Virus record (IMG/VR): IMGVR_UViG_3300013104_000001
Location: 124,001-188,000 of that record
Strand: one strand, 5' to 3'
DNA: 64,000 bases
The position numbers and the translations under genes were made by a program. This document shows positions 2-10,909 of this stretch, one piece after another (positions within the stretch are counted from its first letter, which is position 1; every line of letters starts with the position of its first letter). The notes under the pieces are model-generated. The model did not search any database. It was not told the origin of the DNA and saw only the letters and a program-made list of their open reading frames with translations.

Positions 2-1228
2 ACGTGAAACACCTTCCGGTAGTTCAGAGAACTCAGTCATGGTTTCTGCTGCTTTGAGCATTACCTGGATCTGGTAAATGAAATCCTGGGTGTCTGGTGA
101 GATGCGGTCAAACTCAACGTCCTGTGAGCTGATTAATGCATAATCAGGATACAGTTCTTTAAGCTTGATCTGACCATTACGGTTGGTTGGTTTAGCAACA
201 GCATACAGCGCCAGTGACTTAGTCAGCGACGGGAACACTTGCAGTGATGCTTTGATGTGGTCAGCCGGATACCACTTCATGACTTTGGTCGGCATGTCCA
301 GCATCGTTTCAAAGTCGATTACCGGCGAGTTAATGCCAGTCTCGGTGGTTTTGTTAGGAATGCTATAGGACCGCCAGTCTGGTGCAATCACATATTCGAT
401 TGGGTTAAACAGGTCAGGAATCACCAGTGCCCATTCTTCTTCTGTGAACTTTGAGTTAGCCAGAATATCAGCTTTCAGCAGTTCATAGATCGCATCATCG
501 TTATTGCCGTTCTTACCATAACCAACAATGGGGAAGTAACCCAACTGCCAGCGCGACGTGTTTTCTTTATCGTAGATCTTAAACGAGATCTGTCGCACGA
601 AGGTTGGCGGGTTAACACCCATAAGCTTGTTGATGTTGTTTGCTACGTCACCTTTAGTGACACCATCAATAGCTGCTTTTGCTGTTGCGTAGTCTTCATG
701 CAACACGTCGATATTCGACAACGGGACAGGATAGTCCGCAAAGAGTTCATAGCGCGGATAACTAAGCTCAAATGACTCGTCACTCAGCCACACCTTGACA
801 ATATTGTCAGTGGCGTCGGTTCCGATGCTACCAGAAATCCATTCAGGCGCCCAATTTTTACCATCAGTGATCATGTCACCAATAGTCAGGTTAAACCAAC
901 TTGAACTGAAGTCGGCTTTGATCTGTTGCAGTGCAACGGTCTTGTCGTTGGTGAATCGACCATCTACAATACGTGGCAGCATCCAAGCTTGTAGCTTGAG
1001 AATTGCCAACTGGTAGGCGGTCATCTGAGAAGTGCTAATGGGTGCGTTGTTCTCATCTACCGCAGTGAAAGCTAAAAAAGCTGTGCCTGCCTGATCCGTG
1101 TTAGTGTACGTCCCAACTTCCCGTGAGAAAGAGATTGAGAGTTGCGATAATTCGCCAATGGGGTTTGTAACACCTTTCTGGTTGTTATTCAGTGACGGAT
1201 ACACCGAAAACCCTAGAATCGTTTTCAT
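2..1228 (-). CDS. virion structural protein, phiKZ gp157-like (partial, runs off left edge)
   Basis: Missing from the ORF track because its stop lies outside the window. ATG at 1228 (MKTILGFSVYPSLNNNQKGVTNPIGELSQLS...) and the frame reads open to the window edge. Position divergent from RNase H matches the phiKZ-like layout. Confidence 0.7.
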   Translation of the reverse strand, partial: MKTILGFSVYPSLNNNQKGVTNPIGELSQLSISFSREVGTYTNTDQAGTAFLAFTAVDENNAPISTSQMTAYQLAILKLQAWMLPRIVDGRFTNDKTVALQQIKADFSSSWFNLTIGDMITDGKNWAPEWISGSIGTDATDNIVKVWLSDESFELSYPRYELFADYPVPLSNIDVLHEDYATAKAAIDGVTKGDVANNINKLMGVNPPTFVRQISFKIYDKENTSRWQLGYFPIVGYGKNGNNDDAIYELLKADILANSKFTEEEWALVIPDLFNPIEYVIAPDWRSYSIPNKTTETGINSPVIDFETMLDMPTKVMKWYPADHIKASLQVFPSLTKSLALYAVAKPTNRNGQIKLKELYPDYALISSQDVEFDRISPDTQDFIYQIQVMLKAAETMTEFSELPEGVSR

Positions 1229-3723: not shown

Positions 3724-4521
3724 TTATTTCAGATCTTTCGCCAACTTTTCAGCTGAGTTCGTAAGTGCAGTACCAGTCGCAATGAATAGTGTATTGCATA
3801 CGCTATACAGATCAATGGCACGTGCCGTATCCAGCATGACTTTCGCCAGCAGATCAACATCGGACTTGGTGACTGTAATATCGCCTGACTCAATTTGCGC
3901 ATAGATAACGTCCGTGAGGTCGGCGACACGTTTAACTGAAGCGTTCATGTCACGCACATTTCCGCGCTTGATTGAGCCTACCAGTTTATTGAAGTCATCG
4001 TACGCCGTGATGAATTCAGTCATGTTAGCGAAGCGAGAAGCAAACGAGGCATTGGTGACGTCTTTACCGCCTAAGCTTTTACCCAGTACCGACTCAACTT
4101 TACCCAGCACCATCTTATCAATGCCTGGTGCATAGGCAACGCTTGCTTTACCGGCAGCGACTTGACCTAACCAGCTTTGCAGCTTATTCAGATGATCAGT
4201 CTCTACGAACAGGCAGAAATTACGTACTGTCTGCAGGTTACCGATCCACTCCTTATAAGAGATGTTCAGACGGGCAGGCTGGAACACTTGCAGATCCATG
4301 AAGTCAGTGTAGTTGTGTGTCTTCACGGCTTTTGCAACCGGTGAGAAATCGGCATACACCATCGCGGAGGAGGTGTCATAGATTTTGTCACTGAAGAACT
4401 TCTTTAAACCATCAGAGAAGCTACGAAAGGTGGCAATAAGGTCTAGGCCTTCTAAGCCTGTACCAGTCGACTCACGCAGTCCACGGTAATCGGCTTCTAG
4501 GTTATCAATGTTGTACGACAT
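3724..4521 (-). CDS. virion head protein (phiKZ gp153-like) with N-terminal G-L-E propeptide motif
   Basis: Reverse-strand gene between RNase H and uvsX, as in phiKZ-like phages; TGLEG at residues 21-25. Confidence 0.65.
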   Translation of the reverse strand: MSYNIDNLEADYRGLRESTGTGLEGLDLIATFRSFSDGLKKFFSDKIYDTSSAMVYADFSPVAKAVKTHNYTDFMDLQVFQPARLNISYKEWIGNLQTVRNFCLFVETDHLNKLQSWLGQVAAGKASVAYAPGIDKMVLGKVESVLGKSLGGKDVTNASFASRFANMTEFITAYDDFNKLVGSIKRGNVRDMNASVKRVADLTDVIYAQIESGDITVTKSDVDLLAKVMLDTARAIDLYSVCNTLFIATGTALTNSAEKLAKDLK

Positions 4522-4541
4522 ATGTACTCCGTGAGGGAAAA

Positions 4542-4571
4542 GTAATCTGTTACATAAGATGACTTATTATG
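4542..4571 (+). promoter_or_regulatory. putative middle promoter for uvsX
   Basis: GTAATCTGTTAC-ATAAGATGAC followed by TATG at 4568. Confidence 0.5.
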
Positions 4572-4603
4572 AAGGTATTATTAATTAAAAAGGACCACAC
4601 ACA

Positions 4604-5995
4604 ATGTCAATCTTGTCATTCGGCGAGTATGTTGAGAAGTCACGCCCTATTCGTCCGTTTCTGAATATTGGCGCTGGCTTTGACATACCAACCGGAAGCT
4701 ACCGTTTAGGTAAGCACGGTGAATCTATTCTTAATGGTGGTCTTGCTCCCTTTATTGCTATCGTGGGTAAAGGCAACACCTTTAAGACAGCGATCGGTTG
4801 TTTTATGCTAACCCGCGTACTGGAGCGCTACAATAACTCTAACGCCCTGCACTACGACACCGAGTGTACTTTCAGTCCTGAGCGTTTAATCAGTCTGACC
4901 AACCGCCTGGGTCCTGACGCAGCGCTGGAGTGGTTAGAGAACGAACGTGTGTATCTGACCGATGACTCTGTCATTAAAGGTAACCAGTGGTTTAAAAACT
5001 CTGTTCAACTTTATGCAGAAGCGAAAGGTAAAGGTAAGACCGGTACCCTGCCGTTTGTTGATAAAGACGGCAATCTGATCAAGCACCCATACCCAACCGT
5101 CAACTTCGGCGACTCCATGTCTGAGATGAAATTCAACGACCTGGAAAAGAACTACGCCAAGATGGAGATCGGCCAGGGTGAAATGCAGACCGAAGCCATG
5201 CGTGTGTCAAACGCCAAACGCATGTTAATCGAGAAGACACAAGGTTACGCCAACGCCGGTGGCCTGTATGTGATCATGACTGCGCACTTGGGCAAAGAAC
5301 TCAACCTTGATGGTAAACCACAAGAGAAGAAAACCACCTTCATGAAACAAGGTGACAAGATCTCTAAGGTACCTTCACAGATTCTGTCTCTGCCAAACAA
5401 CGTCTGGGAAATCTCAACCGGTACACAGCTCATTGATAAGAACACCAAAGAGTGGATGTATCCAAAAGCAGGTCGTGATGATGTGGATACCAACGGTAAC
5501 CCAGATCTGATCACCCTGGTTGCGAAGAACCTGCGCGGTAAGAACGGTCCTTCTGGTGTGCCGTGGGAATTTGTGATGTCTCAGTCTGAAGGCCTGCTGC
5601 CACATCTGACCGAGTTCCATTACATCAAGAACGCCGGTCGTTATGGTCTGGGTGGTAATGACCGTAATTACTATGTTGAGTTATGCCCTGATGTGAAACT
5701 GCAGCGTACGCAGGTCCGTGGTAAGATCGATGAAACACCAGAGCTGCAACGCGCCCTGGAGATCACCATGGAAATGTGTCAGATGCGTTTCCTCTGGCAT
5801 ACCCGCGATCCGAAGTACAACATGACTCCAGAAGAACTGCGTGTTGGCCTGGAGAAGAAAGGGTACAAATGGGAGCAGTTACTTAACACCCGTGGGTTCT
5901 GGACTTATGAAGAAGATAATCATCCATTACCATTCTTAAGCACAATGGACTTACTCCGCATGTATCATGATGAGTACCGCCCATACTGGCTGTAA
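4604..5995 (+). CDS. uvsX: UvsX/RecA-like recombinase (phiKZ gp152-like)
   Basis: P-loop GKGNTFKT, YDTE, GDSMS, IMTAHL, KNLRGKNGPSG; size and synteny fit. Confidence 0.88.
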   Translation: MSILSFGEYVEKSRPIRPFLNIGAGFDIPTGSYRLGKHGESILNGGLAPFIAIVGKGNTFKTAIGCFMLTRVLERYNNSNALHYDTECTFSPERLISLTNRLGPDAALEWLENERVYLTDDSVIKGNQWFKNSVQLYAEAKGKGKTGTLPFVDKDGNLIKHPYPTVNFGDSMSEMKFNDLEKNYAKMEIGQGEMQTEAMRVSNAKRMLIEKTQGYANAGGLYVIMTAHLGKELNLDGKPQEKKTTFMKQGDKISKVPSQILSLPNNVWEISTGTQLIDKNTKEWMYPKAGRDDVDTNGNPDLITLVAKNLRGKNGPSGVPWEFVMSQSEGLLPHLTEFHYIKNAGRYGLGGNDRNYYVELCPDVKLQRTQVRGKIDETPELQRALEITMEMCQMRFLWHTRDPKYNMTPEELRVGLEKKGYKWEQLLNTRGFWTYEEDNHPLPFLSTMDLLRMYHDEYRPYWL

Positions 5996-6009
5996 GTGTA
6001 CCCAAATGC

Positions 6010-6038
6010 AGGAGGGGTTTCCCCTCCTCTTTATACCG
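6010..6038 (+). terminator. hairpin with TATACCG tail
   Basis: AGGAGGGG-TTT-CCCCTCCT-CTT-TATACCG just after uvsX. Confidence 0.7.
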
Positions 6039-6072
6039 TCAGTAGAGGGAACTAAGCGAATAGGAAAGCAGT

Positions 6073-6492
6073 ATGCTTAATAAAGAAATACGCATTGTCG
6101 TAGCGTCTGTACGAGGCTTCGCAGATGTTGAGCGTTTAAAACTGACTATTGACGGTCTCCTCAAGGATATTTACGAGATGAACGAAGGTCTCGATGATGA
6201 GGATGATGAACTGATTACTGACAAGAAGATCGTGTTTATGATCAATGGCGAGGGGAGAACCGCTGCGGATATTCTGCCAGCGCTTGCCATGGAGCGTAAC
6301 ATCGAAGTGGAAGTACTCAAAGTCGATTGGTCAAAAGGTAAGAAAGCCTTTTTTGATAACTGTGCCGTTTTAGGCTCAAAGTCAACACACGCTATTATTT
6401 TCACGGACAGCAAAGATGACGGGATGCAGACACTGATTAAATCATGTCTCGACGCCGGGTCTCGTGTTCGTAGTTATAGCGCCTCTATCTAA
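6073..6492 (+). CDS. degenerate SLOG (YspA/DUF2493-like) domain protein
   Basis: RIVVASVRGF..., NGEGRTAAD, VDWSKGKKAFFDN, THAIIFTDSKDDG are colinear with YspA-like motifs and with the C-terminal half of 7306..8181. Confidence 0.6.
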   Translation: MLNKEIRIVVASVRGFADVERLKLTIDGLLKDIYEMNEGLDDEDDELITDKKIVFMINGEGRTAADILPALAMERNIEVEVLKVDWSKGKKAFFDNCAVLGSKSTHAIIFTDSKDDGMQTLIKSCLDAGSRVRSYSASI

Positions 6493-6501
6493 GGTGTAAT
6501 C

Positions 6502-6945
6502 ATGATAGCCTCTGAAGCCAACGTCGGTATACTTGATATTAATGTCACCCACGTCATATGCACAGTTAATTGCGAAGGGCATATGGGTCGTGGCATCGCC
6601 TTGTATCTACGTAAATGTATTCCGGGGCTATACGATCGTTATAACGAACTTTGCAAACTTAAGCTGTTAACGGTGGATAAACTTTGGATCTACCGTTCGG
6701 CACCAAAACAGATCCTCTGCTTTCCAACGAAAGACAAGACCTGGGAAGACAGTCGTATCGAATGGATCGAGGCTAATCTGATTAAGCTTCGAAACACGTA
6801 TAAAGAGAAAGGCATTCGCTCTGTGGCAATGCCTCCTCTGGGGTGTGGAAACGGTAACTTAAAATGGGATGAGGTGCGAAGCCTCATTTATGCCATCTTG
6901 GGCGATTGTGACCTGGAAGTCCACATTTGTTTAGGTAGAAAGTAA
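6502..6945 (+). CDS. macrodomain ADP-ribosylhydrolase, DarG/Poa1p-like
   Basis: TVNCEGHMGRGIA, LCFPTK, SVAMPPLGCGNGNLKW closely match DarG-type macrodomain motifs. Confidence 0.9.
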   Translation: MIASEANVGILDINVTHVICTVNCEGHMGRGIALYLRKCIPGLYDRYNELCKLKLLTVDKLWIYRSAPKQILCFPTKDKTWEDSRIEWIEANLIKLRNTYKEKGIRSVAMPPLGCGNGNLKWDEVRSLIYAILGDCDLEVHICLGRK

Positions 6946-6959
6946 ATGAGGGAATTATC

Positions 6960-7313
6960 ATGAATACACTGGTTTTCTTGTATGTACTGGGCAGTATTTA
7001 TACAGTCGATGTCAAACCGATGCCTGATTACAAAACCTGTCGTGCCGCACAAGCTGTACTCGAAAAGGCTACGGCTGAGCAGAAATATAACGACGGACCT
7101 AATAAGACCGAGTGTTATATCGTCGATGAGAGTAAAGGCGGGTTTGTTGTCATTAGTGGTCGTGATCTTGAATTGCAGCGTCAGAGTGCCGAACTCGATC
7201 GATTGTCACGTGAGACTACAGTTAAGCTTACTCATCAGGTTGAAGTAAACGATCCTTCTAAGTCGGTCAAGTTACAACAGTTCTTGAAAGACCAGGAGAA
7301 CGCACATGAGTGA
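6960..7313 (+). CDS. hypothetical protein, hydrophobic N-terminus and a Cys pair
   Basis: GAGGG RBS; overlaps the next gene by 8 nt. Confidence 0.7.
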   Translation: MNTLVFLYVLGSIYTVDVKPMPDYKTCRAAQAVLEKATAEQKYNDGPNKTECYIVDESKGGFVVISGRDLELQRQSAELDRLSRETTVKLTHQVEVNDPSKSVKLQQFLKDQENAHE

Positions 7314-8181
7314 TGCTCGCGTAGTACCCGATCCGGCCAAGGACGGGGTTACCCACATCAACATTTATACCAAGGGGATGACTTGGCTTGGACAGCAGTT
7401 ATCCAACATGTCGTACTACAGCTTCGCCCATCCTAAACACGGGGTGTTCGGATCACTGGAGGCGTATTGGTATTGGTTAGCAACTGGTCAGCAGCACGAA
7501 GAACTCCGTAACCTGGCAGGTTTTAAAGCAAAGCTTGTTGGTAAACAGTTTGAACGTGTACCGGTGGATAACTTTGAAGAGCAGTTCAAGTTCGCCATGC
7601 AATTACGTTTAGAACAGAACCCGATCATTGCCAAAGCGCTGTCTGAATCACTGCTGCCGTTTGAGCACTATTTCTACTATAGTGGGAAAGTGGTCGATCA
7701 GTCAGATGCACATCGTTGGCAGCTCGACTTCTATGAACAATGGCGTAAAGATCATCCTGTTGAAGATCCATCGATTGCGCTTCTTATTTCCGGTTCTCGT
7801 AAAGAGAAGAACTACGAAAGCTTTAAGAAGATCGTAATGGATTACTTAGCGCCTTATCGTGAAAAGATTAAGGACAGCTACAAGATCGGGATTATCTCAG
7901 GGTTGGCGTGGGAAGGTCCAGATGACATGGCGATTCGTTTATGCCGTGAGGAAGGCTTCATGCTGATCGGTGTGCCAGCTAAATGGAATGAGCAAGGCAA
8001 GGCAGCGGGGATGATCCGTAATGGCGTGATGGGGCGCTTATGCACTCAGGCGTTGGTCTTCTGGGATGGTGAGTCACCAGGGACAAAAGGCCAGATTGAC
8101 TATTTGAAGAAAAATAATATAGACCATCTGGTTTATATTCACGGGCAACACGATCCCGAGTGGAAATCATCGGAACAATGA
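7306..8181 (+). CDS. NADAR-like domain fused to SLOG (YspA/DUF2493) domain
   Basis: N-half: LSNM..F..HGVFGSLEAYW, AKLVGK, AMQLRLEQNP (NADAR-like). C-half: ISGSR, IISGLA.EGPD, AKWNEQGKAAGMIRN, VFWDGESPGTK (YspA SLOG). Confidence 0.75.
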   Translation: MSDARVVPDPAKDGVTHINIYTKGMTWLGQQLSNMSYYSFAHPKHGVFGSLEAYWYWLATGQQHEELRNLAGFKAKLVGKQFERVPVDNFEEQFKFAMQLRLEQNPIIAKALSESLLPFEHYFYYSGKVVDQSDAHRWQLDFYEQWRKDHPVEDPSIALLISGSRKEKNYESFKKIVMDYLAPYREKIKDSYKIGIISGLAWEGPDDMAIRLCREEGFMLIGVPAKWNEQGKAAGMIRNGVMGRLCTQALVFWDGESPGTKGQIDYLKKNNIDHLVYIHGQHDPEWKSSEQ

Positions 8182-8193
8182 GAGGGAGTCATC

Positions 8194-8478
8194 ATGTCAA
8201 CATTGCAGCTCGCGGTTAATAGCGAATACTTTGATGCCATGAAAGATGGGTCAAAACCGGAAGAGTATCGTTTGGTTAATAACTACTGGACCAAGCGTTT
8301 ACTTAACCGGGATTACGATCGTCTGGTGATTACCAAAGGTTATCCAAATCGCGCCGATACATCACGGCGCATTGAGGTGCCTTATAATGGCTATCAAATA
8401 AAAACCATTACTCATCCTCACTTCGGTGATCAGCCCGTGAATGTTTTCGCCATTAAAGTAAATCTGGAGAAACCATGA
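8194..8478 (+). CDS. ASCH domain protein
   Basis: LQLAVNSEYFDAMKDGSKPEEYR is the ASCH G-x-K-x-x-E-x-R signature; TKGYP. Confidence 0.85.
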   Translation: MSTLQLAVNSEYFDAMKDGSKPEEYRLVNNYWTKRLLNRDYDRLVITKGYPNRADTSRRIEVPYNGYQIKTITHPHFGDQPVNVFAIKVNLEKP

Positions 8479-9149
8479 ACGCAGCACGCCAGCAAGTCCA
8501 GGAGTTCATCCTGACTTCTATTGATGAAATCATGCCCGGTTCTAAAAACCGGGATATTTACGTAGACTTCTTTGCCCGTCAATCCGACGAGGCATTTGAA
8601 GCACTGATGCAGCGCATGGAAGAGGATGAAGAGATCTTTCCGTTCTACCATCCTAATTTCACCGGGAAGGTGATCGATGTGGAGCGTGTGATTGGGTTGA
8701 TTGAGAAACACGGCGATACCATTATGGAACAGCTGTATGACATCGATCCAGAAACCGGTCTACAGTATCTGACACCACTTAAGTATCCGGTGCTGTTATT
8801 GCCACTGCGTATTCAGCAGCAGAAGCTGCAGAAGAAAATGTCAGTGCCAAAAGACAACAATCACATCGATGACCTGACCAACCAGCCAACGACCGAATCC
8901 AAGGGCGCATCACTCTCATACCCAGAAGTACAGATCCTGTATGCAATGGGCGGTGATAAGATCCTGGAAGAGACCATGAAGGTTCGTGGTGGCGATGAGA
9001 AAGCTTTCCGTGATTATAACAATGCCATTATTGCAGACGGCGGCGTGACCATCGGAGCGATCAGTTCAAGTAAAACCAAAGTTAAATCGACTCTGACGGT
9101 ACAGACTATTCTAGAGGCGATGCACTTGAGCAACAACCTGGCTAAATAA
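8475..9149 (+). CDS. virion RNA polymerase beta subunit, C-terminal fragment (phiKZ gp149-like)
   Basis: RIQQQKLQKKMS, IDDLTNQPT.ESKGASLSYPE, ETMKVRGGD correspond to the RpoB C-terminus. Confidence 0.85.
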   Translation: MNAARQQVQEFILTSIDEIMPGSKNRDIYVDFFARQSDEAFEALMQRMEEDEEIFPFYHPNFTGKVIDVERVIGLIEKHGDTIMEQLYDIDPETGLQYLTPLKYPVLLLPLRIQQQKLQKKMSVPKDNNHIDDLTNQPTTESKGASLSYPEVQILYAMGGDKILEETMKVRGGDEKAFRDYNNAIIADGGVTIGAISSSKTKVKSTLTVQTILEAMHLSNNLAK

Positions 9150-9169
9150 GTCAGGTAAAGGAATGCAAG

Positions 9170-9736
9170 ATGAGTAGTCTTATCAGTCAATTTAGTGGTA
9201 AAAATAAAGTCGATCTTAATCCGTTAGAACTTGACTTGCATGTGCAGAGAGTCGTTCATGATTATGTTGGTTCTTACCTACGGAACCGCATCTATCTTGC
9301 ACGCACTGCTAACATCGATATAAAGACTGATGTCAATTACACGACTGTCGTAGAGTTCATCGCTTATGTGAACAACGAATTGAACTTTATCCGCATGTGG
9401 AATAAAGCCTCAATGAAAGATGAGATCTGGCCAAATATCATCAATGATGAAAACATCCTGCAGTTTGTTTTCAAAGGCACGACTCACGTCAGTGTACAAT
9501 CGTTTATTAGCGATGAGCAATTTGGTAAACTGGTGTCGCATATCGCCGGTGCGCTGAGTTGTCTCTCGTTTCCTGATAACGATATTATCGATGATGATTC
9601 TTTTGTTAAGGTTCTGCCACGTAACGATGAACTGACTGATCTTTTTACAAAGAACCAGTGGGCGTTGTTTTTGTATTACTTAACCCGAATCGATATTATC
9701 AGCATGGTAACAGGTGGGGGCACATCTGATGAGTAA
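9170..9736 (+). CDS. hypothetical protein
   Basis: AAGGA RBS; part of the operon. Confidence 0.7.
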   Translation: MSSLISQFSGKNKVDLNPLELDLHVQRVVHDYVGSYLRNRIYLARTANIDIKTDVNYTTVVEFIAYVNNELNFIRMWNKASMKDEIWPNIINDENILQFVFKGTTHVSVQSFISDEQFGKLVSHIAGALSCLSFPDNDIIDDDSFVKVLPRNDELTDLFTKNQWALFLYYLTRIDIISMVTGGGTSDE

Positions 9737-10457
9737 TGGCGATCAAATTAACTGTTATATCCCGCTGGATGCTTTGCTTGATACACGTATCGGTACTATC
9801 GATAAGATCGCCGGTGAAGCAGGGTTAAACTTGGTGGCTGACTGGTATCATACTCGCACGTCGGATAAGTTCAACCGTAAAGGAACTGACCTTACCCAAG
9901 AGCGTTATGATGCGGCGTGGAAGCTTCGTGATGAGGATACCTTAAAACGTACTCGCATGACTTTCGTACCGCAATACCTGTTGCATCTGGTGAGTCGCTA
10001 TAACACCTCACACGGCATGCCAGTCATGGCAGCGAATTACAAGATCACCATCAACCTGTGGCCGTATAAGCTCCCGCCTGAGCGTGTGCAGCAGTTACAA
10101 GAGATCATGCAGACCTTTACGTCAGGGGTTGCAGAGATCGCGGTTGATTACATTGATCCTGCTGATTTGTCGGTTGCGTATTTGAAGGCGACATATTCCC
10201 TCTGCATTATGTACGAGTTCAATGCGTGGTTAAACATGCATAAGGATGAGTTTACGAAAGTGCAGATGCCGGGTACTGTGATTATCGCACCAGAGTTATA
10301 TCTGGCTGACGTACCGGATGAATTGATTGATGCTGCGAAGAAGACGGATGGCTTTGCGGGGGTGAGTTTAGCGCTGTGTGCATTATGCACGGTGGTGTTC
10401 TTAGATGTAAGGTTGTTCTCCTACGTCACCGATACACCACCGGTCATCGATGGTTAG
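9729..10457 (+). CDS. conserved phiKZ-like protein (gp147-like)
   Basis: YIPLDALLDTRIGTI N-terminal motif and synteny; ATG at 9729 overlaps the upstream stop. Confidence 0.65.
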   Translation: MSNGDQINCYIPLDALLDTRIGTIDKIAGEAGLNLVADWYHTRTSDKFNRKGTDLTQERYDAAWKLRDEDTLKRTRMTFVPQYLLHLVSRYNTSHGMPVMAANYKITINLWPYKLPPERVQQLQEIMQTFTSGVAEIAVDYIDPADLSVAYLKATYSLCIMYEFNAWLNMHKDEFTKVQMPGTVIIAPELYLADVPDELIDAAKKTDGFAGVSLALCALCTVVFLDVRLFSYVTDTPPVIDG

Positions 10458-10909
10458 CTTTTCTTCTGTCCAGGGGTCATGATGTCATCGTACTCGATGT
10501 GCTCAACCCCTTGGCGGGTTTCACCATCTTTGTAATCCGCCTGTGGCAGTTGATTCTGATCGATCTGTGGTGCCGCTTGCGGTTGTGAACCAGGCAGGTC
10601 TGTACGCAGTGCCAAACCACCGGCACTCAATACCTGTTTGATTACGTTGCCCACGATAGCAGCCTGTGCTTCATCAGACTCTTGCGCCTTAGTTTCCAGA
10701 TCAAGACGTTGGCGGTTGATGATTGATTTGTCGATATCGGACATTGAAGTTAAAGCGATCTTCAACATCTTTGGATCTTGTCGAGTAGCAGGAATGATGG
10801 CACCGCTTTCGCTATCCTTTTCATCAAGGATATCTTCAACGATACCTAAGCGACGCATTTGCAAACGACGCATCAAGGCCCCATCATCTAATTCAAAGTC
10901 CGTAGCCAT
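10454..10909 (-). CDS. conserved helical protein of unknown function
   Basis: GGAGG RBS; minus-strand TATG at 10941-10944 upstream. Confidence 0.75.
   Translation of the reverse strand: MATDFELDDGALMRRLQMRRLGIVEDILDEKDSESGAIIPATRQDPKMLKIALTSMSDIDKSIINRQRLDLETKAQESDEAQAAIVGNVIKQVLSAGGLALRTDLPGSQPQAAPQIDQNQLPQADYKDGETRQGVEHIEYDDIMTPGQKKS

What the first reader, a model, noticed from the sequence alone, without database searches (positions are those of the whole stretch)
7306..8181. Divergent NADAR-like domain fused to an intact YspA SLOG
Seen: the N-half has the front NADAR motifs (LSN, S-x-E-x-Y/W, AK-x-x-G, L-E-Q-N-P) but lacks the usual D-x-x-WG...N-x-LG end, carrying LPFEHYFYYSG instead. 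The C-half is a canonical GSR / SG / RN / FWDG-S-GT SLOG. Inference: a new NADAR subfamily with changed substrate, possibly regulated by a SLOG ligand or passing released ADPR to it.
Basis: partly seen in the sequence, partly recalled or inferred. Interest (0 to 1): 0.65.

Follow-up and report, generated by a model that had tools for sequence, protein, structure and literature searches.

The report
Phage NADAR–SLOG ADP-ribose hydrolase gene
This jumbo-phage gene encodes a histidine-type "phage NADAR" ADP-ribose-removing domain fused to a YspA/DprA-like SLOG domain, an already described domain combination that most likely helps the phage strip ADP-ribose marks that bacterial DarT-type defences put on its DNA; public records mislabel it as DprA or hypothetical.

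Summary
The refutation test fails: the N-half (residues 9-150) adopts the NADAR/YbiA fold (pLDDT 97; only NADAR structures match, Z 9.3-10.7). The C-half is a SLOG fold (YpsA Z 12.0, DprA 11.7). The "new subfamily" reading is overstated. The missing D-x-x-WG/N-x-LG end with a near-invariant His (H121) is the published signature of phage (T4 gp30.3/AdfN-type) NADARs, and T4 AdfN lacks that end too. SLOG fusions to NADAR, Macro and DUF4326 in jumbo phages were described in 2021-2022. What is less well known: this N-domain family is large (1,475 clusters), almost invisible to Pfam, and lacks the canonical Lys seven residues after the catalytic Glu. The ortholog, Erwinia phage RAY gp153 (73% identical), localises to the phage nucleus and was read as "DprA". 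The gene lies next to an AdfM-like (DarG2-type) macrodomain gene, and relatives fuse the two. Best guess: a nuclear de-ADP-ribosylase for ADP-ribosylated DNA bases, with the SLOG domain binding ssDNA or a nucleotide. It is a new member of a known kind, of moderate-to-low interest.

The parts
7306..8181 (+). Whole gene: 291-aa two-domain protein (P0001), ortholog of Erwinia phage RAY gp153
   Evidence: 73% identity over the full length to RAY gp153; phrog_11222 E=2.8e-157
7330..7755 (+). N-terminal NADAR-fold domain (residues 9-150), His-type (phage/gp30.3-like)
   Evidence: AF2 pLDDT 97.1. Foldseek PDB top 3 are YbiA 2B3W, 8BAU and 8BAT, then noise. VIA Z 10.7/9.5/9.3. hhalign to a YbiA-type profile 94.3%, E=1e-7; to T4 AdfN 86.5%, E=4.6e-6. 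Atlas and BFVD named neighbours are all NADAR.
7459..7461 (+). Codon of E52, predicted catalytic Glu (equivalent to Pn E43 / E. coli C7 E88 / T4 AdfN E36)
   Evidence: 111/111 conserved; aligned to the NADAR Glu by HMM and hhalign
7666..7668 (+). Codon of H121, last-strand His that replaces the YbiA Glu125 (signature of phage NADARs)
   Evidence: 110/111 conserved; lies at the start of strand 122-125; aligned to the T4 gp30.3 'KH' His; literature
7342..7362 (+). Family-specific N-terminal motif D13-G14-x2-H17-x-N19
   Evidence: D13 110/111, G14 110/111, H17 102/111, N19 111/111; the I-N-x-Y strand aligns with YbiA
7768..8145 (+). C-terminal SLOG domain (residues ~155-280), YspA/YAcAr type, DprA-like Rossmannoid
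   Evidence: VIA: YpsA 2NX2 Z 12.0, DprA 3UQZ Z 11.7, ShosA, ThsA SLOG Z 9.3. Pfam YAcAr 19.5 bits, E=8.6e-4, below the cut-off; 36/90 relatives match at E<=1e-3. Motifs invariant.
6502..6945 (+). Neighbouring gene: DarG2-type macrodomain (AdfM-like), fused to the NADAR-SLOG protein in related phages
   Evidence: Pfam Macro E=4.5e-11; NCBIfam DarG E=4e-39; 72% identical to the N-terminal domain of the 429-aa triple fusion P0007; 86% to RAY gp152 and ~30% to PhiKZ-group macro proteins; AdfM literature
6073..6492 (+). Upstream gene: small, degenerate SLOG-like protein (RAY gp151 equivalent)
   Evidence: Pfam YAcAr E=1.3e-3, phrog_289 E=2e-9; weak similarity to the C-half
7294..7298 (+). Shine-Dalgarno AGGAG, 7 nt before the ATG

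Best explanation
The gene encodes a two-domain enzyme of a nucleus-forming jumbo phage. Residues 9-150 are a His-type NADAR domain, in the same superfamily, and with the same last-strand His, as T4 gp30.3/AdfN. Residues ~155-280 are a YspA/YAcAr-type SLOG domain that closely resembles the Rossmannoid ssDNA-binding core of DprA. Proposed mechanism: the NADAR domain hydrolyses the N-glycosidic bond between ADP-ribose and a nucleobase (most likely guanine N2, the DarT1/pierisin-type mark) on phage single-stranded DNA inside the phage nucleus. E52 and H121 would flank the distal ribose. The SLOG domain would hold the enzyme on ssDNA or bind the ADP-ribose/nucleotide moiety. Together with the adjacent AdfM-like macrodomain, which removes thymine-linked ADP-ribose, it would form a compact anti-DarT module. 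Shown here: the two folds, the conserved residues, the recurrence of the fusion, the Macro fusion in relatives, synteny, and that these are the genome's only such domains. Taken from the literature: nuclear localisation of the RAY ortholog, and the activities of AdfN and AdfM. Inferred: catalytic activity, substrate, and the role of the SLOG domain.
For: NADAR fold. Remote but specific sequence homology: the family profile hits only 8BAU and 2B3W in the PDB; hhalign 94.3% to YbiA-type NADARs and 86.5% to T4 AdfN, with E52 on E36 and H121 on the T4 His; 12/111 relatives match Pfam Phage_30_3, and true NADARs carry both PF08010 and PF08719. E52 is 111/111 and H121 110/111 conserved. All tested NADAR families, including the His-type T4 enzyme, remove G-ADPr from DNA (PMC11125620; PMC11825919; PMC12945103). 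SLOG fold with DprA at Z 11.7. The ortholog RAY gp153 (73% identity) co-localises with DNA in the phage nucleus (PMC10299810). The neighbouring macro gene is DarG2/AdfM-like; AdfM is nuclear and counters DarTG2 (PMC13309987). Macro+NADAR+SLOG form one polypeptide in related jumbo phages. The complete 287-kb genome has only this one NADAR-like, one Macro and one YAcAr domain, all within about 2 kb.
Against: No activity data exist for any member of this N-domain family. The Lys at Glu+7 (Pn K50 / C7 K95 / T4 K43), needed for full activity in tested NADARs, is not conserved (position 59: S38/A30/K16/G9). The D130/W133 pyrophosphate contacts of 8BAU are absent, so the ligand pose and substrate may differ. 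Pfam NADAR and Phage_30_3 do not match this protein itself. The frequent fusion to DUF4326 (a predicted phosphatase-like domain; 29/90) and the view of Iyer et al. favour soluble ADPr derivatives. The SLOG domain has no demonstrated ssDNA binding. It is unknown whether the host carries a DarT1-type system.
Confidence: 0.5

Rival explanations
1. Soluble-signal scavenger (the Iyer/Burroughs/Aravind model). The NADAR and SLOG domains, with the Macro neighbour, degrade or sequester low-molecular-weight ADP-ribose derivatives made by host immunity, such as cADPR isomers from TIR/Thoeris systems, ADPr-1''P or ADPr>P. The SLOG domain would act as a sensor or as a second N-glycosidase.
For: Published prediction for phage Macro/NADAR/SLOG/DUF4326 fusions (PMC9503650, PMC7824862). 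The SLOG half resembles the cADPR-binding ThsA SLOG (7UXS Z 9.3). Fusion to DUF4326 in 29/90 longer relatives suggests multi-step small-molecule processing. Loss of the canonical Lys and of the D..W pyrophosphate contacts is compatible with a different ligand.
Against: The RAY ortholog sits with DNA inside the phage nucleus, whereas such signals act in the cytoplasm. The fused or adjacent macro is of the DarG2 type, which acts on DNA. Every NADAR family tested so far acts on base-linked ADPr in nucleic acids.
Confidence: 0.25
2. DprA-like recombination mediator (the current annotation in RAY and AH06). The SLOG half would load the phage UvsX/RecA-like recombinase on ssDNA, and the N-half would be a non-catalytic accessory domain.
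For: DprA is a strong structural match to the C-half (Z 11.7). 8/90 relatives touch Pfam DNA_processg_A. The gene lies about 1.3 kb downstream of the UvsX-like gene. The RAY ortholog is nuclear.
Against: This protein has no Pfam DprA match; YAcAr is the best family. The N-half keeps an invariant catalytic Glu and His in a NADAR fold across 1,475 clusters, which argues for an enzyme. The partners it fuses with are ADP-ribose enzymes (Macro, DUF4326), not recombination proteins.
Confidence: 0.08
3. One reading: a new NADAR subfamily with a new substrate (another base, RNA or a metabolite), allosterically controlled by a ligand of the SLOG domain or channelling released ADP-ribose to it.
For: The family has its own invariant D13-G14/H17/N19 motif and lacks the Glu+7 Lys. 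It is not recognised by Pfam NADAR. NADARs differ in base range (G only versus G and C; PMC12945103).
Against: The His-type last strand and the missing D-x-x-WG are shared with T4 AdfN, a guanine-ADPr DNA hydrolase. The architecture is already described. There is no evidence for allostery or channelling.
Confidence: 0.12

Closest known systems
T4 gp30.3 / AdfN (anti-DarT factor NADAR; Pfam Phage_30_3 PF08010), the 'phage NADAR' clade
   Same: NADAR fold; catalytic Glu (E52 vs E36); His in the last strand in place of the YbiA Glu; no D-x-x-WG/N-x-LG end; a C-terminal helix after the hairpin; phage-encoded.
   Different: No detectable pairwise similarity (BLASTP E=11), only profile-level similarity. 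Lacks the T4 K43 equivalent. Has the YbiA-like N-terminal I-N-x-Y strand plus a D-G..H motif that T4 lacks. Fused to a SLOG domain. Belongs to a nucleus-forming jumbo phage.
YbiA / canonical NADAR (PF08719; PDB 2B3W, 8BAU, 8BAT)
   Same: Same fold over 136-141 aligned residues (Z 9.3-10.7). Shared motifs: (I)N-x-Y-S strand, LSNF, S-x-E, A-K/R-x-x-G, K-x-x-Q-N/H-P.
   Different: Pfam model not matched. Glu125 replaced by His. D130/W133/N143-x-L-G end absent. Lys at Glu+7 absent.
Phage NADAR-YspA(YAcAr) SLOG, Macro-NADAR-SLOG and DUF4326-NADAR-SLOG fusion proteins described by Iyer, Burroughs, Anantharaman and Aravind (2021, 2022)
   Same: Same domain architecture and the same kind of host (jumbo and medium myoviruses). 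An ESM Atlas cluster of 106 mostly viral 273-aa proteins carries PF08719+PF10686.
   Different: Here Pfam does not recognise the NADAR half and the Macro domain is a separate neighbouring gene. No member of either set has been characterised biochemically.
Erwinia phage RAY gp153 ('putative DprA-like protein')
   Same: Ortholog: 73% identity over the full length, same gene cluster; structural TM 0.99.
   Different: RAY lacks the two small inserted ORFs (window 6960-7313 and 8194-8478) that AH06 shares with the window. The published interpretation (recombination/DprA) overlooks the NADAR half.
DprA (PF02481) and YpsA (PDB 2NX2) SLOG proteins
   Same: The C-half has the same Rossmannoid SLOG fold and the G-S-R, S-G-x-A..G-x-D, R-N and S-x-G-T motifs.
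   Different: No SAM or winged-helix domains of DprA; no Pfam DprA match; no known ligand.

Membership tests
NADAR superfamily | [quoted passage not shown] | tested here: met
   AF2 model pLDDT 97.1, with strands 17-19/40-42/46-48, core helices 51-59, 65-69, 72-79, 90-104, 106-114 (plus a short helix 27-32), hairpin 122-125/128-131 and helix 137-149. Only NADAR structures match: 8BAU Z 10.7 (138 aligned), 2B3W Z 9.5, 8BAT Z 9.3. Foldseek top 3 are NADARs with prob 0.98-1.0.
NADAR superfamily | Match to Pfam PF08719 above the gathering score (35.1 bits) | tested here: not met
   No hit at E<=1 for the protein or anywhere in the genome; only 2/111 relatives reach E=0.025. Profile-profile comparison does connect them: hhalign 94.3%, E=1e-7.
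NADAR superfamily | Conserved catalytic Glu after the first sheet (Pn E43 / C7 E88 / T4 E36) | tested here: met
   E52 is 111/111 conserved and aligns to that Glu in the HMM and hhalign alignments.
NADAR superfamily | Conserved Lys seven residues after the Glu (Pn K50 / C7 K95 / T4 K43) | tested here: not met
   Position 59 is Ala here; across the family it is S38/A30/K16/G9.
Phage NADAR (gp30.3/AdfN-type) clade | His in the last strand in place of the YbiA Glu / DarG1 Asp | tested here: met
   H121 is 110/111 conserved and lies at the start of strand 122-125. hhalign places it on the His of T4 'KVLKHS'. The definition comes from PMC11543638, PMC11125620 and PMC12945103. The equivalence rests on alignment, not on a superposition I could inspect.
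Phage NADAR (gp30.3/AdfN-type) clade | Match to Pfam PF08010 Phage_30_3 | tested here: not met
   No hit for this protein. 12/111 relatives match (best E=2.9e-7), and an Atlas sister cluster has 16% PF08010.
AdfN (functional class: anti-DarTG1 factor) | Removes guanine-linked ADP-ribose from DNA and rescues the phage from DarTG1 | not testable with these tools
   Needs enzyme and plaque assays.
YspA/YAcAr SLOG family (PF10686) | Pfam match above the gathering score (28.2 bits) | tested here: inconclusive
   This protein scores 19.5 bits, E=8.6e-4, and 21 bits in the genome scan. Close relatives pass (P0005 35.6, P0009 30.5, P0011 42.2 bits), and 36/90 relatives match at E<=1e-3.
SLOG superfamily | Rossmannoid three-layer fold with a Gly-rich loop after strand 1 and a conserved late S/G-x-G-T loop | tested here: met
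   YpsA Z 12.0, DprA 11.7, TM1055 10.7, ShosA 10.2, LOG 8.8, ThsA SLOG 9.3. G163-S-R165 and S257-x-G259-T260 are invariant.
DprA (PF02481) | Pfam match and the DprA domain set (SAM, Rossmann, winged helix) | tested here: not met
   No PF02481 hit for this protein. The protein ends about 10 residues after the SLOG core, and the N-half is NADAR.

The most novel reading that the evidence does not exclude
Chimalliviruses carry a two-enzyme de-ADP-ribosylation module that works inside the phage nucleus. An AdfM macrodomain would act on thymine-ADPr. This His-type NADAR, tethered to ssDNA by a DprA-like SLOG domain, would act on guanine-ADPr (or another base-ADPr). The large, Pfam-invisible phrog_652 family, found in hundreds of Ackermannviridae, GAP32-like and other phages, would then be an unrecognised and very common class of anti-DarT1-type counter-defence enzymes that works without the canonical NADAR Lys.
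Probability: 0.3. Interest if true: 0.6.

Novelty: new member of a known kind. Interest (0 to 1): 0.35.

Why it matters
It corrects an annotation. A protein recorded as "DprA-like/recombination" (RAY gp153) or "hypothetical/DUF2493" is half NADAR. It also links a large unannotated phage family (phrog_652; 1,475 clusters at 50% identity) to the NADAR superfamily, with fold-level evidence. It offers a concrete candidate for how nucleus-forming phages could handle guanine ADP-ribosylation of their DNA, next to the recently described AdfM (thymine). Finally, it is a natural test of whether a SLOG/DprA-like domain serves as a DNA-targeting or a ligand-sensing module. It does not reveal a new kind of system.

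Tried and rejected
1) The word-index protein search with the N-half alone found nothing. This was a sensitivity limit, not absence: the exhaustive search found 1,475 clusters.
2) phmmer of the whole protein against PDB sequences gave only noise (LasR, E>1).
3) NCBIfam gave no hit for the protein.
4) BLASTP of the N-half against T4 gp30.3 showed no similarity (E=11); only profiles connect them.
5) Complex prediction of the protein with the neighbouring macrodomain gave no verdict (score 0.00, controls not run). It is evidence neither for nor against binding.
6) The promoter/terminator scan of 4400-10600 found nothing beyond chance.
7) The supplements of PMC9503650 are not held, so I could not check whether RAY gp153 is listed there as NADAR. 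The founding papers (de Souza & Aravind 2012; Burroughs et al. 2015) are not held either.
8) A literature search for YAcAr/DUF2493/YspA returned mostly unrelated caiman papers.
10) The N-domain tree is weakly resolved (13 of 158 branches well supported), so the number of independent SLOG fusions cannot be fixed. Parsimony gives 14 changes, and well-supported branches force at least 2.
11) Rejected: that the N-half is a novel fold, or that the motif resemblance is due to chance.
Full report
WHAT IS THERE. The window is part of a complete 287,406-bp phage genome with direct terminal repeats (window = bases 124,001-188,000). It is related at about 77% nucleotide identity to the Erwinia jumbo phages AH06, RAY, Simmy50 and Deimos-Minion (genus Agricanvirus). 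RAY is a nucleus-forming phage (chimallivirus). ORF 7306-8181 (+) is real. It has an ATG start, an AGGAG Shine-Dalgarno at 7294-7298, and a start that overlaps the stop of the preceding ORF (ATGAGTGA). It encodes 291 aa. It sits in a same-strand run of genes: a UvsX-like recombinase (4604-5995), a small SLOG-like protein (6073-6492), a macrodomain protein (6502-6945), a 117-aa ORF (6960-7313), this gene, a 94-aa ORF (8194-8478), and a virion RNA polymerase beta fragment (8475-9149).

CHECK OF THE OBSERVATION. In 111 diverse N-domain relatives E52 is invariant, and N34, A75, K76, G79, L117, P118, H121 and Y122 are conserved at 90% or more. In 43 SLOG relatives G163, R165, G199, D206, W227, R238, N239, S257 and G259 are conserved at 95% or more. 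A profile of 37 YbiA-type NADARs confirms that canonical NADARs have an invariant D130...W133...N143-x-L145-G146 end, which this protein lacks.

IS THE N-HALF NADAR? By simple sequence tools it is not. Pfam NADAR (PF08719) and Phage_30_3 (PF08010) do not match at E<=1, NCBIfam gives nothing, and PHROGs places it in phrog_652, "unknown function". The exhaustive HMMER search shows that the N-half is an independent module of about 140 aa with 1,475 clusters (at 50% identity) at E<=1e-3 and 895 at E<=1e-10. A profile of 111 of these finds only two PDB sequences at E<=10, and both are NADARs (8BAU at 0.013, YbiA 2B3W at 0.06). Profile-profile comparison with YbiA-type NADARs gives 94.3% probability, E=1e-7, over 102 columns, ending just before the canonical E125/D130/W133 segment. 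Twelve of the 111 relatives match Pfam Phage_30_3 (best 2.9e-7), and bona fide NADARs carry both PF08010 and PF08719. Local HMM searches are reciprocal but weak.

The fold test is decisive. AlphaFold2 models of the whole protein (pLDDT 93.9) and of the N-domain alone (pLDDT 97.1, pTM 0.90) were searched against solved structures. In a search of 48,161 PDB representatives that does not rely on Foldseek, the only matches to residues 9-154 in the top 50 are 8BAU (Z 10.7, 138 residues aligned), 2B3W (Z 9.5) and 8BAT (Z 9.3). With Foldseek on the N-domain alone, the top three are the same NADARs (prob 0.98-1.00, TM 0.54-0.63), followed by a roughly 40-fold jump in E-value to noise. In the ESM Atlas and in BFVD, every named neighbour beyond the protein's own unnamed family is a NADAR.

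IS IT A NEW SUBFAMILY? Mostly not. [quoted passage not shown] T4 gp30.3 is AdfN, a DNA guanine de-ADP-ribosylase that neutralises DarTG1 (PMC11825919). Its sequence reads ...KVLKHSIASGL... and also has no D-x-x-WG or N-x-LG. The family profile aligns to T4 AdfN (86.5%, E=4.6e-6), with E52 on the catalytic E36 and H121 on the T4 His. H121 is conserved in 110/111 sequences and lies at the start of strand 122-125. So "LPFEHYFYYSG instead of D-x-x-WG" is the known His-type signature.

There are real differences from T4 AdfN, though. There is no pairwise similarity. A YbiA-like N-terminal I-N-x-Y strand is preceded by a family-specific D13-G14-x2-H17-x-N19 motif. The Lys seven residues after the Glu (K50/K95/K43, required for full activity in tested enzymes) is not conserved (S38/A30/K16/G9). 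The family is best described as a large, poorly annotated branch of the His-type phage NADARs.

THE C-HALF AND THE FUSION. Residues 154-291 match YpsA (Z 12.0), DprA (11.7), TM1055, ShosA, LOG proteins and the ThsA SLOG domain. Pfam YAcAr/YspA is the best family but falls below its cut-off for this protein (19.5 vs 28.2 bits), while close relatives pass. The fusion is recurrent. Forty-two of 161 representative N-domain proteins carry this SLOG domain, 41 of them in the order N-domain then SLOG. Among 90 relatives of at least 200 aa, 36 have YAcAr, 29 DUF4326 and 9 Macro. In the phage collection, 22 records hold the full-length fusion among 633 with either half. On a weakly resolved tree of the N-domains the SLOG label is strongly clustered (14 changes vs 37 for shuffled labels; well-supported branches force at least 2). 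This architecture is not new. Iyer et al. described YAcAr SLOG domains fused to Macro, NADAR and DUF4326 in jumbo phages (PMC7824862, PMC9503650), and an Atlas cluster of 106 mostly viral 273-aa proteins is auto-named "NADAR/YspA SLOG".

CONTEXT THAT BEARS ON FUNCTION.
(i) The adjacent macrodomain (6502-6945) matches the DarG antitoxin model (E=4e-39). It is 86% identical to RAY gp152 and matches the PhiKZ-group macro proteins. That family was recently named AdfM: it is nuclear, removes DarT2 thymine-ADPr and protects against DarTG2 (PMC13309987).
(ii) In related jumbo phages the macro domain (72% identical) is fused in frame to the NADAR-SLOG protein (P0004-P0009, 421-431 aa).
(iii) The ortholog RAY gp153 (73% identical) was GFP-tagged and co-localises with phage DNA in the nucleus, where it was interpreted as DprA (PMC10299810).
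(iv) The genome contains no other NADAR-like, Macro, DUF4326 or YAcAr domain.

MOST LIKELY MECHANISM. The protein is a nuclear de-ADP-ribosylase for base-linked ADP-ribose on phage ssDNA. The substrate is most likely guanine-ADPr, the activity shared by all NADAR families tested, including the His-type. The SLOG/DprA-like domain would provide ssDNA or ADPr-nucleotide binding, and the enzyme would work beside AdfM. The folds, conserved residues, fusions and synteny are shown here. Localisation and the activities of the relatives come from the literature. Activity, substrate and the SLOG role are inferred. I put about 0.5 on this.

The main rival (about 0.25) is the published prediction that such modules degrade soluble ADPr-derived immune signals. 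The DUF4326 fusions, the similarity to the ThsA SLOG domain and the altered pyrophosphate-binding residues favour it. Nuclear localisation and the DNA-specific macro partner argue against it. A pure DprA-like recombination role (about 0.08) does not fit the conserved catalytic residues or the fusion partners. A test of whether the macro and NADAR-SLOG proteins bind gave no verdict and is not used as evidence.

VERDICT. This is a new member (an unannotated branch) of a known kind of protein and a known architecture. Its value lies in correcting the annotation and in providing a testable candidate for anti-DarT1-type counter-defence in nucleus-forming phages.

Noticed in passing
window 6502-6945 (+): A 147-aa DarG2-type macrodomain protein (NCBIfam DarG E=4e-39; 86% identical to RAY gp152), very likely an AdfM ortholog (anti-DarTG2). 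Older records annotate it as 'putative phosphatase'.
   Followed up: partly
window 6073-6492 (+): A 139-aa protein with a weak YAcAr/phrog_289 match. It looks like a second, degenerate SLOG domain that lacks the GSR and RN motifs, just upstream of the macro gene. It is equivalent to RAY gp151, and AH06 calls it 'DNA binding protein'. Function unknown.
   Followed up: partly
window 6960-7313 (+) and 8194-8478 (+): Two small ORFs (117 aa with a hydrophobic N-terminus and no family; 94 aa in phrog_625) flank the NADAR-SLOG gene here and in AH06 (genes 159 and 161), but are absent from RAY. The first splits the macro and NADAR-SLOG genes, which are adjacent in RAY and fused in other phages.
   Followed up: partly
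P0011, P0012 and 29 of 90 longer relatives: DUF4326 (a predicted rhodanese-phosphatase-like domain) is the commonest N-terminal partner of this NADAR-like domain, often together with the SLOG domain. This phage has no DUF4326 anywhere.
   Followed up: partly
window 4604-5995 (+) and 8475-9149 (+): A UvsX-like recombinase (RAY gp150, nuclear) and a virion RNA polymerase beta-subunit fragment bracket the ADP-ribose gene cluster. The order is conserved in RAY and AH06.
   Followed up: no
phage collection, (e.g. Vibrio phage ICP1 MW794176 86627-87016; Klebsiella phage KP8): The SLOG half alone matches proteins annotated 'accessory helicase helB', 'GTP-binding domain' or 'DprA' in many unrelated phages, so YAcAr-type SLOG domains appear to be inconsistently named across phage records.
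   Followed up: no
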